DNA of 64,000 nucleotides from Selaginella moellendorffii (lineage: Eukaryota; Plantae; Lycopodiophyta): contig NW_003314262.1 of assembly GCF_000143415.4 (NCBI RefSeq), forward strand, positions 5,738,304-5,802,303, given 5' to 3'. The notes below the pieces were generated by a model. The model was given only the letters and a program-made list of their open reading frames with translations. It was not told the DNA's origin and ran no database searches. The position numbers and the translations under genes are program-made. Positions 1,567-7,500 of this stretch are shown one piece after another; position 1 is the first letter of the stretch, and every line of letters begins with the position of its first letter.

Positions 1567-1995
1567 ATGGCTTCTAGCACCAAATCTGCGTCGCTGCTTC
1601 TCCTCCTCGCCCTCTTCATCGCGATTCACCACTGCGGCGCCCAGCTCACGGATTGCCCCAGCGACACCAGCCCCAACGTGGTCTACTACAACACCCGGAA
1701 CACCCAGCCGGGCAGCGCCTTCCAGAGAAATCTCTCCAACGTCTACCGCCGGATCATCAATGGCGCCACATTCCGCCAGGGATCGATCTCCTACAACGCC
1801 GGCGTCGACCCAGATCGCGTCTACGGCTTCTCGGCGTGCTTCGGCGGATTCACGGCGCCCGGCGATTGCGTCCAGTGCCTGGTCGACATCAGGGCGAATT
1901 TCGATAGCGTGGCGCCGCTCGCTGTTGGCGCGCGTATGTGCTCCAAGAACGGCGAGAGGACGTGCTACATGCGTTACGAGAACTACAGCTTCTAG
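1567..1995 (+). CDS. Secreted single-domain DUF26/Ginkbilobin-2-like cysteine-rich protein, intronless
   Basis: Signal peptide (LLLLLALFIAIHHCGA), GSAFQRNL, VYGFSAC...DCVQC, AVGAR and terminal CYMRYENYSF align to Gnk2. Confidence 0.9.
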   Translation: MASSTKSASLLLLLALFIAIHHCGAQLTDCPSDTSPNVVYYNTRNTQPGSAFQRNLSNVYRRIINGATFRQGSISYNAGVDPDRVYGFSACFGGFTAPGDCVQCLVDIRANFDSVAPLAVGARMCSKNGERTCYMRYENYSF

Positions 1996-2054
1996 CCTCT
2001 CTCGGCTCGAGGAGCCCAAAATTTTAAATAAGAAGGAATATGCTTAAAGTGTTC

Positions 2055-2091
2055 TTGACCGGTTGACTCAGTCAAAAGGATGGTCAGTCAA
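2055..2091. promoter_or_regulatory. Dense W-box cluster including a palindromic double W-box
   Basis: TTGACC 2055-2060, TTGACT-C-AGTCAA 2063-2075, AGTCAA 2086-2091. Confidence 0.55.
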
Positions 2092-2212
2092 ACAGTGGTG
2101 TACCGTTACGCGGTGCGATCGGGGCCGCCCGTTTGCGAGGGAAATCCAATCGTTTCTCCTTCCAAGCGAGGGAGATTTAGGGTATTTCAAGAATGCTGTG
2201 TGGCGCCGGGCT

Positions 2213-4442
2213 ATGGAGTCCTCCACCGCCGTCGGGCCGGCTGGATTGTCGCTCACATCGGCGGACAGGCTTCGCATCTATCGTAAGTGTTTCCATGACC
2301 TGGACGAGCATCTCGCGCAACTCCACCAGGAAGGATTGGGCCCAAGCGATGCCGAGTTTGTGGCGCTCCAGGCCGAGATTCGCTGCTTGGAGGAGCTTAT
2401 AATGCTCTTCACGGACATCACGTCGATTTTGCCCTCGATCGCGCCCAAATCGTAAGTGGTGCTTCCGCCCAGTCAGTTTGTTTTGTTTCGGAGTTACTTG
2501 GAATGCTGGCGACTAAAGGTTGCTTTCTTTCTCGCTTCAGAGTAACTGGAGATGGATTTGATCCTTCCTTACCGAGTGTTGACGGGTTGAATCTGTCACT
2601 AGTTACAGATATCTTGATGCTAAGCGCGACTTCCCCGTGGACAGTTTTTGTGGCCGAGCGTTCCCAGGTGATCGATTTCTCAAAAGTTTTACTCATCACT
2701 TTCGTGTTCAGTGGCAAATTTGCTATGTCTCACCGAGCGTGAAGCGCGCGTTTGGTTGGAAGGCTTCTGAGCTTTTGGGAGTTCCTGCTTGGGATGGTTG
2801 TCACACGGAGGACATTCCGACTTTGCAGCGTGTAAGCTCCTTTTTTTTCATTTCATCCTTTTAACACAAGGAATTTCTACATGCTAAGGTATTGCAGATG
2901 CTGCTGTTGAAAGAATGTGCAACAACTGGAACTTCTTTAGTGTATAGAAGGCTTAGAAAGGATCGTTCGTATGCTACTGTTCAAGCGACTGGCCGTGCTG
3001 TTGGAACCAGGTAGTTCCTTTCTGACTGCCTCGGCTTGTTCAGAAAAACTGTTTGTCCTCGCTTTTCAGGTGGTATGCCTGGGTGGAACAAGACATCATC
3101 AACAACAACGCATTGGTAAGGCTGGACTAATTCAGGAAGTTAACTGAATGGGCTTGGTCTTTGCAGAATGGAACTCCTCAGGCACTCGACGTTCTATCAG
3201 ATCTTCCTCTGTCCTTGCCAGCAAGCAAGTCTAGCACTAAAACAAGATCAGCAGACTCCGAAGGTGGTCCAAGTATTCGCTCCCGGAAGCTTTCTAGCAC
3301 CCAAAGGCCCACGTTAGAAGCCGAAGGAAATACACGAGGATGGAACAGCACCGCTCGTCCTGCTTCTCCGCTGGCATTATTGCCCGGTTTGGAAAGACAA
3401 ACCAGGCCTTCAAAGAGCAGAGGGAACGGTGAGAATGCTGAAGCGCACAGCGCAAGCCAACATTCCTTGGAACCCGATAACATGGCTGATGAAAGCCAAG
3501 TCATGCTCAAGGTACCTTGTTCATCTTCTAGTAGGTGTTGAGACTGACTTAAGTTTTCCTTAGTCTCAGGGAATGAATTTGCCCACCTCATCTCATCTCA
3601 GCTTCTCAGGGTCTGTATTCCTAAGCCGGCTGTTATCGTGTATCACGAGTCGTTTGTCGAACTTATTTCTTATCTAGATCCGAAACACAGCCCGTGGAGA
3701 AACTGAAAAGAGGAAAGGCAGTACACGACGAGGGTGGAGCATCAAAGCCAAAGGTTCCAGGTACTCCCTCCCAAGTAGCTGCTTCTTCGAGGCCCGCTAG
3801 TGCACAACAAATTAACGAAGAGGTTGATCTTCTTTGGGGAAAAAAGGTGACATTCTTTCTACATTTAAGTTTAGAGCCAACCAAGTCAGTGTTTTTAATT
3901 GCAGATTTTGCTGGTTGAGGATGACCGAGTTAATAGAACTATAGCACAGAGGCTTCTGGAGAATCTCAAGTGTAACGTGAAAGTAGCGTGCAATGGGAAG
4001 GAGGCCTTGGATATATTACAAGAGGGAGCACCAGTGAAGGCGGAGGATATTGAGGAAGGAAAGGAGATACCTCCGCAATTCGATCTCGTCTTGATGGATT
4101 TGCTAATGCCAGTGATGGACGGAACAAAAGCGGTGAGTGCTAGCGCTTTCTCTTCTCAAGTTTGTGAGCTCACAGCGATTCTACAGGTTCAATACTTTCG
4201 GGATTGGGAGGCCGAGCAAGAACCCCCGAGAAAGAGGATGGTGATTTTTGCGCTTACATCAAACGTTAGCGGTACGAAGAAATTTTCGTTTTCTCCTTTC
4301 GAGTTCCAAGGATCTCTCCTTTTTTTCTTCCTGGTTTTTAGATGGCGATATGGTGAAGTGCGCGATAAGTGGCTTTGATGAGTTTGTGAGCAAGCCATTG
4401 ACGATCGACAAGCTCATGGATCGTCTCCAGCCCAAGCACTGA
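2213..4442 (+). CDS. PAS domain + C-terminal response-regulator receiver protein with no histidine kinase domain (~534 aa, 11 exons)
   Basis: Exons 2213-2451, 2541-2667, 2712-2831, 2889-3010, 3070-3115, 3167-3511, 3564-3610, 3678-3822, 3905-4132, 4187-4271, 4342-4442 join in frame (1605 nt). PAS: ICYVSPSVKRAFGWKASELLG...CHTEDI...YRRLRKDRSYATV. REC: ILLVEDDRVN, FDLVLMDLLMPVMDG, IFALTSN, GFDEFVSKPL. Confidence 0.85.
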
Positions 4443-4565
4443 GCCCTTTGTACAGTCACAATTCATTCGATTCAAACGAATAAGCGAATCTTCCATTTTC
4501 AAAATGGGTATCTTTCAAACCGCTCTAGGGCTTTTGGATAGGGTTTTTGGCGAGAGGGCGGAGCT

Positions 4566-7500
4566 ATGGGCGTCGAGAACTATCATGTGATCGAGCTCGT
4601 CGGCGAGGGATCGTTCGGGAAGGTCTACAAGGGAAGGCGCAAGTTCACTGGCCAGGTTCATTTTGGTTTTCTTGCTTGCCCCTGATCGATCGATCGACCA
4701 GACTGTCGCCATGAAATTTATTCTCAAGCACGGCAAGAGCGACAAGGACATCGAGAATTTGCGGCAAGAGATTGAGGTAGAGTGCGTGTTCCGAGAGATT
4801 TCTTCTTTTCTAAGAAGATTTTACTTCAGATTTTGCGGCAACTAAAGCACGAGAACATTATAGAAATGCTGGATGCATTTGAAAGCCCACAGGAGTTTTG
4901 TGTCGTGACAGAATTTGCACAGGCAAGTGTAACATTTTCTTTTTGTTTCTGGTGTATTTTTTCATTTTTCTTTTCTAGTGTGTGGTTACTCACATTTTTA
5001 TCATTGTTCTTTCTAGGGAGAATTGTTTGAGATTCTTGAAGACGACAAGTGCCTCCCCGAAGCTCAAGTCCAGGCGATAGCAAAGCAACTGGTATGTATG
5101 TTAAGCCATCTTTTCTTTTCTTGAATACGTATCGTAGGTTCGAGCACTACACTACCTTCATTCTCATCGCATTATCCACCGGGATATGAAGCCACAAAAC
5201 ATACTGATCGGTGCCGGTGGCATCGTAAAGGTACATTTCTGGTTTGTGAACTTTTCTGAATGTCATTTTTTGCTGAAATCAGCTCTGCGATTTTGGATTT
5301 GCGAGGGCAATGTCTTGCAACACAATGGTTCTTCGCTCGATCAAAGGTTGTCTTTTAGAGTTCTATACATTCATGAAACCGTGACGCTATTACAGGAACG
5401 CCACTGTACATGGCTCCCGAGCTTGTTCGTGAGCAGCCTTACAACCACACGGCAGATTTATGGTCTCTTGGTGTGATATTGTAAGTTTTCCTTTTATGTC
5501 TGTTTTAATTTAATGCACATTGTCATAAAACAGGTATGAACTCTATGTTGGCCAGCCTCCTTTCTATACTAACTCCGTATACACGCTTATTCGCCATATA
5601 GTAAAGGTAATTGTTGCGATTTTGTTATAAGTTTATCTATCGCTGTCGAGCAGGATCCAGTCAAATATCCTGATACTATTAGCTCGAACTTTAAGAGTTT
5701 CTTGAAAGGGCTCCTTAACAAGGTTCGTTCTTGTACCGGGTTACCCACAGGATCTGACAAAGCGTGCGTAGGTTTCTGAAAGTAGACTGACATGGCCAGC
5801 TTTGTTGGATCACCCTTTTGTTCGGGAGACATCTGATGAAATAGCAGCACGAGTAAGACATTGCTAAAAGAGCTCAGAGTTGACAAATGTGATGCAGGAA
5901 GCAAGAGCTGCGACTGCATTCGAAAGAGGGTGTGACGCTGCCTGGAAAGGCGAGGCTAATATTGTGCTAGCTTCACCTGCTAATGTACTCGATCGTGCAC
6001 CCCTGGGAACACCAGGTATGATGTCTGCGTCAGATGCAGTCGCTTTAACTCTGCAAACAGACAAGGTGGAGCCAGCTCCTACCGAAAGACCAGAATCAGT
6101 GCCGTGTCCATCTGATGACAATATTAGTCAGGCGTGCACAGCTCCTCTCGATAATGCTGGTAAGGCTACTGTCGGTATAACAAATTTTCATTGTCCTTTT
6201 GCAGAAGTTTCCGTGCTTGATAAGCTAGAAGCTTCTTCTCGCACTGCCAAAGGTGCGAATGCTATTTGCCAGGACCGAGGTGCTTTCGCTCACGTTTTAC
6301 ATCCTTTTCGAAATTTTAATAGTAAAGGAACTGCAGCGAGGTACGGGACTAGTACAACTATGGGAGCTTAACACGTTACTGTTGTTGCATAGTGACCAAG
6401 CCAGTGCGGGGGCTAATCAAGCATTGCGTGTCTTGTGGAATTTACTCGGCGCAGGAGCCGTATCACAAAGAGCAGCCGTAGAAGACGCCATACCGGCGAT
6501 CCTTGGTCTTTCTAGAGCTACTTTGGGATCGAATATTTCAGACCATGCAGCCTTGCTTACAAAGGTTAAGTTTTCTATTGCGTTTCATTGTATGTATTTG
6601 TAACAACGTTTTCAGGGGCTGGGCGTTTTAGGCAAGCTTATGGAAATTGGTGCCAATAAAATGGAAAGTTCTTACCTACACCACAGTGTTGCACTCTTGC
6701 GACTTTATCCTCAAGTAAGTTATTCAGCAATATATGTATTTAAAATTGAACCACACAAAATTTGCAGGCTGTTTCATATCAACATGACTCGTCCGGACGT
6801 GTACTCTTCGAGTCGACTGCGTGTGTCGCTCAACTCCTTATGCGAATTACATCGGGCCTTTCCAAATTCTTTGGTTCTGCACAAGACGTCAAAGGAGACG
6901 TTCAAATCATGACGCAGATTGTGGGACAGGCTCGATCCCTTTCCATCGCCGATCATCTTTGCTCTTGCCTCAATGTCACGGGGTCGAACCTTATGTCTAG
7001 TTTATGGACGTCTTCACCTGCTGCCGGAGAAGCATGCAAGGCAATGTGGGCCTTGACTCTCGGCCTAAATCTTTTGACTGGTAAAGAAACTCACCCCCAA
7101 GGTTTTCCACTTGCAGTTCTGAGAGGCTGGACAGAAGCCAAGAACGACAGTAATAAGTTGTCCGATGGCGTCATGGAAGTGGTGACCGACAGCATCTGTA
7201 AACTTAAAGGTGTTCAGGCTGGCCTCTGTCATTCGCTCCTTCATGGCTCAGAGTCCACGTTGTCTTCTACACTCCAGGTGCGTTGATCTTTTCCCGTGAT
7301 ATTTGGTTTTTGCTTATGTGTTGTTTGTTTCAGATTCTCTTAAGGTGCTGCATAATTTCGCCAATTGTCTGTGAAGTTCTTGCTGGTATCTCAGCTAAAG
7401 ATCGCGCTTCGAATCAAGCTCCAGGTGGTGGTGACGGCACTGTGGTCGCTGCCATATTCAGGATGGTATCTGTGCATTTGGCGAGTAGTCAGGAAGGTGG

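What the first reader, a model, noticed from the sequence alone, without database searches (positions are those of the whole stretch)
2213..4442. PAS-linker-receiver protein: a two-component signalling architecture with no kinase
Seen: an intact 11-exon ORF with an N-terminal helical segment, one PAS domain, ~180 aa of Ser/Pro-rich linker and a C-terminal receiver. The receiver keeps the acidic pocket (EDD), phospho-Asp (LMDLLMP), Thr and Lys-Pro, and resembles hybrid-kinase or type-C receivers. No H-box, HATPase, Myb/GARP or CCT domain is visible. Established: land-plant response regulators fall into types A, B, C and pseudo-RRs, and the PAS proteins known in non-seed-plant phosphorelays are histidine kinases. 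Inference: a possibly undescribed sensor-gated response regulator or phosphate sink.
Basis: partly seen in the sequence, partly recalled or inferred. Interest (0 to 1): 0.8.

Follow-up and report, generated by a model that had tools for sequence, protein, structure and literature searches.

The report
Kinase-less PAS–receiver protein of non-seed plants
This Selaginella gene is real, spliced and expressed, and it encodes a sensor-type PAS domain tied by a floppy linker to an intact phosphorelay receiver with no kinase; the same protein occurs from streptophyte algae to mosses and lycophytes, was not found in seed plants, and I found no study of it.

Summary
An 11-exon gene at 2213-4442 (+) encodes 539 aa. 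All ten introns appear in transcript contigs from three studies, and one contig carries all ten junctions. The product is letter-identical to Selaginella moellendorffii XP_024540218.1, which RefSeq auto-names a "histidine kinase".

Domains:
- a predicted two-helix N-terminal hairpin with no Pfam family;
- one PAS_3 domain;
- a disordered linker of about 190 aa;
- a C-terminal receiver with all catalytic residues (E407, D408, D467, T502, K524).

No kinase core is detectable, either by Pfam or by profile-profile comparison.

It is not a decaying kinase. The same architecture is conserved in Diphasiastrum, Physcomitrium, Ceratodon, Sphagnum, Klebsormidium, Spirogloea and probably Closterium, and the gene tree follows the species tree. 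No seed-plant, fern, liverwort or hornwort member turned up. The receiver is of the hybrid-kinase type. The PAS is of the PAS_3/PAS_11 subtype that ARNT also carries.

Most likely function (inferred): an HPt-fed response regulator or phosphate sink whose PAS and helical module senses a signal or binds partners.

No paper in the searchable library describes it. I rate it a new variant of a known kind, of moderate interest.

The parts
2174..2212 (+). 5' UTR. Transcript contigs begin at 2174, 2187 (directly after adapter sequence) and 2196. An out-of-frame upstream ATG lies at 2193-2195.
   Evidence: tables 7 and 8; the upstream ORF runs 69 codons and overlaps the main ATG.
2213..2451 (+). Exon 1 (aa 1-79 plus 2 nt). 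It holds the start codon and the conserved helical hairpin: helix 1 aa 16-39 (RLRxYRxCFHELD block) and helix 2 aa 46-75 (LQAEIRCLEELIMLFT block), about 2258-2437.
   Evidence: No Pfam family matches this part.
2581..3094 (+). PAS domain (aa ~94-208), spread over exons 2-5 (2541-2667, 2712-2831, 2898-3010, 3070-3115). It contains an invariant C152-H153-x-x-D156 and several invariant Trp residues.
   Evidence: Pfam PAS_3 at 32-34 bits against a cut-off of 25.6. Exons 3 and 4 match adjacent parts of the PAS_3 profile. The model shows the canonical PAS order of strands and helices.
3095..3825 (+). Disordered linker rich in Ser, Ala and Pro (aa ~209-395; end of exon 5, exons 6 and 7, most of exon 8). 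It includes a conserved basic-Ser motif, RKLS at aa 255-258 (3284-3295).
   Evidence: pLDDT is below 50 throughout. There is no Pfam hit, and nothing in the linker aligns to kinase cores.
3564..3569 (+). Six bases (TCTCAG) that an alternative acceptor can skip. RefSeq isoform X2 (537 aa) lacks aa 331-332.
   Evidence: The junction seen in RNA is the X1 form.
3841..4427 (+). Receiver (REC) domain, aa ~401-535, covering the end of exon 8 and exons 9-11. The acidic pocket is E407/D408, the phospho-acceptor is D467 (codon 4097-4099), and T502, F521 and K524-P525 are present. An insertion of about 20 aa lies between helix 2 and strand 3.
   Evidence: Pfam Response_reg at 66.1 bits against a cut-off of 30.2. 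The (beta-alpha)5 fold is modelled at pLDDT 70-91. Invariant columns are, residues.
4440..4442 (+). Stop codon TGA. The 3' UTR runs to about 4471-4518.
   Evidence: contig ends and depth.

Best explanation
The gene encodes a soluble, kinase-less member of the His-Asp phosphorelay. It has a phospho-accepting receiver of the hybrid-kinase type, joined by a long disordered tether to an N-terminal module made of a two-helix hairpin and one PAS domain.

Shown here:
- the gene is real and transcribed as one unit;
- both folded modules and every catalytic receiver residue are conserved from Klebsormidium to lycophytes;
- no kinase core is present.

Inferred:
- Asp467 is phosphorylated by HPt proteins (or in trans by a hybrid kinase), as for other eukaryotic receivers of this type.
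- The PAS and hairpin module then does one of two things. It may sense a ligand or partner and so control access to, or the lifetime of, the phospho-Asp; this would make the protein a signal-gated phosphate sink or competitor for HPt~P, like type-C regulators. Or it may be the output, with dimerisation or partner binding switched by phosphorylation.

I favour the 'PAS-conditioned phospho-acceptor acting through protein-protein contacts' reading. No DNA-binding or enzymatic domain exists to serve as an output.
For: Gene and transcript. Identity to the RefSeq protein. Domains above Pfam cut-offs, and none other above its cut-off.

Catalytic residues E407, D408, D467, T502 and K524-P525 are invariant in 8 full-length members. 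The receiver is modelled with confidence as (beta-alpha)5.

By sequence, the closest solved receivers are all eukaryotic hybrid-kinase receivers that exchange phosphate with HPt proteins: 8phn, AHK5 (4euk, which I recall as the AHK5-AHP1 complex), AHK4, SLN1, CKI1 and ETR1. There is 43% identity to the terminal receiver of PAS-HisKA-HATPase-REC hybrids.

Family members with the same two Pfam domains and nothing else occur in two lycophytes, three moss genera, Klebsormidium and Spirogloea. The gene tree is congruent with the species tree. A Physcomitrium transcript contig encodes the full 549-aa orthologue.

No transmembrane-like segment is present.
Against: No biochemical or genetic datum exists, so phosphotransfer, its partner and its direction are all inferred.

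The structural models of the PAS and hairpin are low confidence (pLDDT about 56). No ligand pocket or dimer interface can therefore be read.

With a tether of 94-435 aa, it is not evident how the PAS and the receiver communicate.

Expression in the one raw RNA run is low.

Confidence: 0.62

Rival explanations
1. It is the decaying remnant of a PAS-containing hybrid histidine kinase. On this view the linker is what is left of the DHp and ATPase core, and the protein is on its way to loss, or acts only as a pseudo-kinase.
For: The receiver sits at the C-terminus as in hybrid kinases and is of hybrid-kinase type. The best non-family hits are PAS_3-HisKA-HATPase-REC proteins. An origin by deletion of a kinase core, long ago, is therefore plausible.
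Against: No HisKA or HATPase_c signal appears at E <= 0.1 in five members. hhalign of the family against such hybrids aligns the receiver only. Linker length and sequence vary freely. PAS, hairpin and receiver are strongly conserved across streptophytes, with a species-like gene tree. Five of the six differences between the two Selaginella haplotypes lie in the linker and none touches a catalytic residue. The gene is expressed and correctly spliced. If a kinase core was lost, that happened before Klebsormidium and land plants diverged, and the product has been maintained since.
Confidence: 0.06
2. It is a phosphorylation-switched partner-binding or transcription-related protein of the HLH-PAS kind. 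The N-terminal hairpin would act like a helix-loop-helix dimerisation element, and the ARNT-like PAS would pair with another PAS protein, under control of the receiver.
For: Among solved structures the family profile hits animal bHLH-PAS and PER proteins almost exclusively: 50 of 51 hits, with ARNT at E 2.2e-14. ARNT2 is the best single-sequence hit. ARNT chains top the Foldseek list and the ESM Atlas structural neighbours. A two-helix element precedes the PAS, as in bHLH-PAS proteins.
Against: No Pfam HLH match appears in any of 11 N-termini, even at E <= 10. There is no basic region ahead of helix 1. In the HMMER alignment, family helix 2 falls on ARNT helix 1, not hairpin on hairpin. There is one PAS, not two. 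Foldseek superpositions over helices plus PAS have rmsd 13-17 A and TM about 0.36, on a low-confidence model. PAS domains of metagenomic multi-PAS kinases score as high or higher with the same profile: 41.9 bits against 33.8 for ARNT PAS-A. The link is therefore to a PAS subtype, not to animal proteins as such.
Confidence: 0.1
3. It is an annotation artefact, with two neighbouring genes (a PAS protein and a single-domain response regulator) read as one.
For: In Closterium the PAS part and a family-type receiver are annotated as separate proteins. Some Sphagnum models hold the receiver only.
Against: One 1642-nt transcript contig carries all ten junctions from the 5' UTR into the last exon, and two further studies show the same junctions. 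Transcript contigs from a moss (L002) and from an unnamed sample (L003) each encode the whole PAS-to-REC protein in one ORF. The fused architecture recurs in 8 or more species.
Confidence: 0.02

Closest known systems
Type-C response regulators of land plants (ARR22/ARR24 type)
   Same: The receiver resembles those of hybrid kinases. There is no DNA-binding output. The proposed action is by taking phosphate from HPt proteins. The type-C description is from my own knowledge; the hybrid-kinase likeness of this receiver is.
   Different: Type-C proteins are receiver-only and short. This protein carries a conserved helical hairpin, a PAS domain and a long tether N-terminal to the receiver, and it is missing from seed plants. 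No tree with type-C sequences was built here.
PHK1/PHK2, the PAS-containing histidine kinases of Physcomitrium (PMC6137987)
   Same: Both are PAS plus receiver proteins of the phosphorelay, and the phyletic range is similar: bryophytes, lycophytes and Klebsormidium, but not seed plants. The PHK range is as reported in PMC6137987; this family's range is.
   Different: PHKs have a HisKA/HATPase core, which this family lacks. No PHK appeared among the named best hits. The two were not compared directly, so a pathway link is speculation.
Bacterial-type hybrid kinases PAS_3-HisKA-HATPase_c-REC, mostly from metagenomes
   Same: These are the best non-family matches. Receiver identity is 38-46% (43% in hhalign, E 8.5e-32), and the PAS is the same Pfam subtype.
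   Different: They carry the kinase core, and often HPt and extra receivers. They lack the N-terminal hairpin. Whole-protein profile scores drop from 248 bits or more (family) to 139 bits or less.
Receiver domains of eukaryotic hybrid kinases with solved structures (AHK5 4euk, AHK4/CRE1 7p8c, SLN1 2r25/1oxb, CKI1 3mm4, ETR1 1dcf)
   Same: These are the closest solved relatives of the receiver, at E 1.5e-16 to 9e-7. They share the 'EDxxVN' helix-1 motif and the 'MPVMDG' loop.
   Different: Those receivers are part of kinases. This one stands without a kinase and has an insertion of about 20 aa before strand 3.
PAS-A and PAS-B of animal bHLH-PAS proteins (ARNT, BMAL1, HIF, AHR, PER)
   Same: These are the closest solved relatives of the PAS, and both ARNT PAS repeats match the profile. 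The PAS_3/PAS_11 subtype and the 'HPDD' motif are shared.
   Different: No bHLH is present, there is a single PAS, and a receiver replaces a transactivation region. The likeness is not exclusive, because bacterial-type PAS domains score as well.

Membership tests
Response regulator receiver (CheY-like, PF00072) | Profile match above the curated cut-off | tested here: met
   66.1 bits against a cut-off of 30.2, aa 403-535.
Response regulator receiver (CheY-like, PF00072) | Acidic pocket, phospho-acceptor Asp, conserved Thr/Ser and Lys | tested here: met
   E407, D408, D467, T502 and K524-P525 are present and invariant in 8 members.
Response regulator receiver (CheY-like, PF00072) | (beta-alpha)5 fold | tested here: met
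   Five strands alternate with five helices at aa 402-535, at pLDDT mostly 70-91.
Response regulator receiver (CheY-like, PF00072) | Is phosphorylated on the Asp by an HPt protein or kinase | not testable with these tools
   This needs a phosphotransfer assay.
PAS fold (PF08447 PAS_3) | Profile match above the curated cut-off | tested here: met
   32.0-34.2 bits against a cut-off of 25.6 for the Selaginella protein. All 11 members match, with a best E of 2.7e-11.
PAS fold (PF08447 PAS_3) | Five-stranded sheet with the helices between strands B and G | tested here: inconclusive
   The model has the canonical order: strands at 114-119 and 124-128, four helices, then strands at 175-181, 187-197 and 200-207. 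However, pLDDT is only about 50-66. PAS-only PDB matches superpose at rmsd 3-5 A.
Hybrid histidine kinase (the name RefSeq gives it) | HisKA/DHp domain with an H-box | tested here: not met
   No HisKA at E <= 0.1 in five members. hhalign against real hybrids aligns only the receiver. The conserved His28 in helix 1 is Lys in Klebsormidium.
Hybrid histidine kinase (the name RefSeq gives it) | HATPase_c catalytic domain | tested here: not met
   No HATPase_c hit, and the linker is modelled as disordered.
Type-A response regulator | N-terminal receiver with only a short C-terminal tail | tested here: not met
   The receiver is C-terminal and is preceded by about 400 aa that include a PAS.
Type-B response regulator | GARP/Myb DNA-binding domain after the receiver | tested here: not met
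   No Myb/GARP hit, and the protein ends 4 aa after the receiver.
Type-C response regulator | Receiver-only protein | tested here: not met
   A conserved PAS and hairpin are present.
Type-C response regulator | Receiver groups with hybrid-kinase receivers | tested here: inconclusive
   The closest solved and database relatives are hybrid-kinase receivers. No tree including type-C sequences could be built.
Pseudo-response regulator (PRR) | Phospho-acceptor Asp replaced, and a CCT domain at the C-terminus | tested here: not met
   D467 is kept and there is no CCT hit.
bHLH-PAS transcription factor | Basic helix-loop-helix (PF00010) before two PAS repeats | tested here: not met
   No HLH hit in 11 N-termini at E <= 10, and only one PAS.

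The most novel reading that the evidence does not exclude
The family is a fifth, so far unnamed class of plant response regulator. In this reading it is a PAS-conditioned phospho-acceptor present in the streptophyte ancestor and lost in the line to seed plants. It would couple a PAS-sensed cue (light, redox, a metabolite or a partner protein) to phosphate flux through the HPt pool. It may be the missing downstream or feedback partner of the PAS-histidine kinases (PHK1/2), which show the same phyletic range.
Probability: 0.25. Interest if true: 0.7.

Novelty: new variant of a known kind. Interest (0 to 1): 0.55.

Why it matters
Plant two-component signalling is taught with four receiver classes (A, B, C and pseudo) and with PAS domains only on kinases and photoreceptors.

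A conserved, expressed PAS-plus-receiver protein without a kinase would add a component to the phosphorelay of non-seed plants. It runs from Klebsormidium to lycophytes and was not found in seed plants. It would also offer a handle on how that network was simplified on the way to seed plants.

It is directly testable in Physcomitrium, where an orthologue (XP_024375476.1) exists and gene targeting is routine.

On the practical side, the RefSeq names 'probable histidine kinase 1' and 'hybrid signal transduction histidine kinase B-like' are wrong for this protein. They could inflate kinase counts in comparative studies.

Tried and rejected
1. DHp/H-box reading of helix 1 ('FHELD' resembles 'HELR'). 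Rejected: the His is Lys in Klebsormidium, there is no HisKA hit, and the domain order is wrong.

2. HLH reading of the hairpin. Not supported.

3. An exclusive animal (ARNT) kinship of the PAS. Weakened: metagenomic kinase PAS domains score equally or better with the same profile.

4. A kinase remnant in the linker. Nothing found.

5. Full-length AF2 model. Mean pLDDT was 50.7, and only the receiver and the helices are usable. A domain-only model of aa 1-215 reached pLDDT 55.8, so the Foldseek ranks and Atlas neighbours are leads only.

6. Word search with the PAS region alone. It returned only family members plus one metagenomic kinase, which says little about distant PAS kin.

7. Earlier notes of this scan. 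Nothing on this gene.

8. Literature. Five searches, including accession numbers, and three papers read in part; no mention of the family was found. Ishida et al. 2010 (Biosci Biotechnol Biochem 74:2542) did not come up in these searches and I did not read it. It classifies the moss genes and could mention the family.

9. I did not type the spliced protein into any tool. I reached it through an exon reference (window:3905-4270, which reads through the in-frame intron 9), and then used the stored ids.

10. One call failed on a frame error and was corrected.

11. No tree with plant type-A, B, C or PRR receivers was built, because no references to those sequences were available.
Full report
**1. 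The observation**

Reading the region and translating it in three frames gave an 11-exon model on the + strand:
- exons 2213-2451, 2541-2667, 2712-2831, 2898-3010, 3070-3115, 3167-3511, 3564-3610, 3678-3846, 3905-4132, 4187-4271 and 4342-4442;
- ten GT..AG introns of 44-89 nt;
- a 1620-nt CDS encoding 539 aa.

Public runs were laid on 1900-4800. Every one of the ten junctions is present in transcript contigs from three different studies (X1, X5, X6). One 1642-nt contig of X1 starts at 2187, directly after adapter sequence, and carries all ten junctions into the last exon. Stranded raw RNA reads (X24) show six of the junctions, and their orientation fits an RNA of the + strand. Depth in that run is low, about 1-4x, against about 45x over the 3' end of the upstream gene.

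PAS and receiver are therefore on one mRNA, and no upstream exon could add a kinase. The upstream neighbour (1567-1995) is a separate Stress-antifung/DUF26 gene. The downstream neighbour (from about 4566) is a protein kinase gene with its own contigs.

**2. Identity**

I did not type the spliced protein. An exhaustive HMMER search used a stop-free reference covering exon 9, the in-frame intron 9 and exon 10. It returned a 539-aa protein at 100% identity.

My model is letter-identical to P0267 = XP_024540218.1 of Selaginella moellendorffii. It differs at six residues from the other haplotype's XP_024525639.1. Five of those lie in the linker, one near the C-terminal end, and none touches a catalytic residue.

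RefSeq's automatic names are 'hybrid signal transduction histidine kinase B-like' and 'probable histidine kinase 1'. A 537-aa isoform uses an acceptor 6 nt downstream at exon 7.

**3. Domains**

Pfam on exon pieces and on the whole protein gives:
- PAS_3 at 32 bits (cut-off 25.6), aa 126-197;
- Response_reg at 66 bits (cut-off 30.2), aa 403-535;
- beyond a weak, sub-threshold PAS_11 match, nothing else at E <= 0.1: no HisKA, HATPase_c, Hpt, Myb or CCT.

The receiver has E407-D408, D467, T502, F521 and K524-P525. AlphaFold models it as a regular (beta-alpha)5 domain at pLDDT 70-91, with an insertion of about 20 aa before strand 3.

The N-terminus is predicted as two long helices (16-39 and 46-75, pLDDT 60-83) that match no Pfam family. 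The PAS model has the canonical order of elements but low confidence.

Residues ~209-395 are modelled as disordered and are 81% small, polar or charged residues. No window is hydrophobic enough for a membrane span.

**4. A conserved family, not a relic**

Word-index searches with the protein and with a family profile found the same small set, all annotated with PAS_3 plus Response_reg and nothing else:
- Diphasiastrum complanatum;
- Physcomitrium patens;
- Ceratodon purpureus;
- Sphagnum species;
- Klebsormidium nitens (GAQ91844.1, named 'CheY-homologous receiver domain and PAS domain-containing protein');
- Spirogloea muscicola (three copies);
- an unnamed transcript (SRR8128905).

Closterium has the PAS part and a family-type receiver annotated as separate proteins. 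A Physcomitrium transcript contig encodes the whole 549-aa orthologue.

Profile scores fall from 248 bits or more in the family to 139 bits or less in the next hits. Those next hits are bacterial-type PAS-HisKA-HATPase-REC hybrids. In the exhaustive search of 1.84 billion representatives, receivers above 54% identity all belong to this family or are short exon-sized pieces of it (fragments without a taxon label). The next are at 47% or less. No seed-plant, fern, liverwort or hornwort protein appeared.

The alignments show three conserved blocks: the hairpin, the PAS and the receiver. Between them lies a linker of about 94-435 aa with almost no conservation, apart from an R-[RK]-x-S motif 45-50 aa after the PAS in most members.

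A maximum-likelihood tree separates lycophytes plus mosses from the algal sequences, and it recovers Selaginella with Diphasiastrum and Sphagnum with the other mosses. That is the pattern of vertical descent.

**5. Is the linker a dead kinase?**

- Five members have no HisKA or HATPase signal.
- hhalign of the family alignment against six real PAS-kinase-receiver hybrids aligns the receiver only (E 8.5e-32, 43% identity) and nothing in the linker.
- The conserved His28 in helix 1 ('FHELD') briefly suggested an H-box. It is Lys in Klebsormidium, and the element lies before the PAS, not after it.

An origin by ancient loss of a kinase core remains possible. 'Decaying' does not fit a protein maintained since before Klebsormidium and land plants diverged.

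**6. What the two domains resemble**

Receiver. By sequence, the closest solved structures are receivers of eukaryotic hybrid kinases: 8phn, AHK5 (4euk), AHK4, SLN1, SSK1, CKI1 and ETR1, at E from 1e-16 to 1e-6.

PAS. The single sequence hits ARNT2, CYCLE, ARNT and BMAL1. The family profile hits 51 PDB sequences, of which 50 are animal bHLH-PAS or PER proteins (ARNT at E 2.2e-14, with both PAS-A and PAS-B matching) and one is bacterial. ARNT also tops Foldseek and the Atlas structural neighbours.

I tested whether this means a special animal link or an HLH-PAS architecture. It does not hold:
- No HLH match appears in any N-terminus.
- The alignment puts family helix 2 on ARNT helix 1, not hairpin on hairpin.
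- The superpositions are poor (rmsd 13-17 A) and rest on a weak model.
- The same profile scores PAS domains of metagenomic multi-PAS kinases at 41.9, 30.4 and 27.5 bits, against 33.8 for ARNT PAS-A.

The PAS therefore belongs to the PAS_3/PAS_11 subtype shared by those groups.

**7. Mechanism**

Shown: a soluble protein with an intact, conserved phospho-acceptor receiver and a conserved hairpin-plus-PAS module, but no kinase, DNA-binding or enzymatic domain.

Inferred from what is established for eukaryotic phosphorelays:
- Asp467 receives phosphate from HPt proteins, and that transfer is reversible.
- The protein then acts through protein contacts. It may be a PAS-conditioned sink or competitor for HPt~P, as proposed for type-C regulators. 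Or it may be a regulator whose PAS and hairpin pairing is switched by phosphorylation.

I cannot tell which of these applies. I put about 0.6 on the general reading.

**8. Known or new**

Five literature searches, including the accession numbers, and partial reading of three papers on plant and eukaryotic two-component systems found PAS only on kinases and no mention of this family. PMC6137987 reports that the PAS-kinases PHK1/2 have a similar phyletic range, which makes a shared pathway worth testing.

The library is incomplete. The 2010 classification of moss two-component genes by Ishida et al. did not come up in these searches and I did not read it.

PAS-plus-receiver proteins are, to my knowledge, common in bacteria, and these sequences are already in public databases with domain labels. 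I therefore rate this a new variant of a known kind: an unrecognised class of plant phosphorelay protein. It is not categorically new.

Noticed in passing
window 2193-2399: An ATG at 2193, 20 nt upstream of the main start and out of frame with it, opens a 69-codon ORF that overlaps the start of the coding region. Transcript contigs begin at 2174, 2187 and 2196, so some mRNAs would carry it and some would not. It could damp translation of the main ORF.
   Followed up: partly
window 3284-3295 (aa 255-258, RKLS) and the same place in relatives: A basic-Ser motif, R-[RK]-x-S, is the only recurrent element in the otherwise unconserved linker. It lies about 45-50 aa after the PAS in Selaginella, Diphasiastrum, Physcomitrium, Ceratodon, Klebsormidium, and loosely in Sphagnum and Spirogloea. 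In the two mosses it reads RRxSxP, which looks like a 14-3-3 site. It is a possible kinase site, but could be chance in a Ser/Arg-rich stretch.
   Followed up: partly
window 4133-4186: Intron 9 is 54 nt, in frame and free of stop codons. If retained, it would insert 18 aa between strand 3/helix 3 and the rest of the receiver. No retained form was seen in the runs laid.
   Followed up: partly
window 3564-3569: A tandem acceptor (TCTCAG) gives the RefSeq isoform X2, which lacks two residues (SQ, aa 331-332) in the linker.
   Followed up: partly
window 1567-1995: A single-exon gene encodes a 142-aa secreted-looking Cys-rich protein of the Stress-antifung (DUF26) family. It was read about 45x deep at its 3' end in the raw RNA run, far above the PAS-receiver gene. 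Allelic differences appear at 1946, 1969, 1996 and 2005.
   Followed up: partly
window from about 4530 (ATG near 4566) onward: A multi-exon Ser/Thr protein kinase gene starts less than 130 nt after the stop of the PAS-receiver gene. The three genes are packed with intergenic gaps of about 100 nt.
   Followed up: no
Closterium proteins P0159/P0160 (PAS part) and P0009 (receiver part): In Closterium the family's PAS part and a family-type receiver are annotated as separate proteins in different strains. The PAS carries long Gly-rich N-terminal and internal insertions. This is either a split gene model or a real fission.
   Followed up: no
P0012 (Mesostigma viride, 3187 aa): A giant Mesostigma protein carries a receiver 46% identical to this one. 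It is among the closest non-family receivers. Its architecture was not examined.
   Followed up: no
RefSeq names of P0001, P0267 and P0151: Automatic names call these kinase-less proteins 'probable histidine kinase 1' and 'hybrid signal transduction histidine kinase B-like' or 'F-like'. UniRef also labels the Klebsormidium protein 'histidine kinase'. Such names could mislead counts of kinases.
   Followed up: yes
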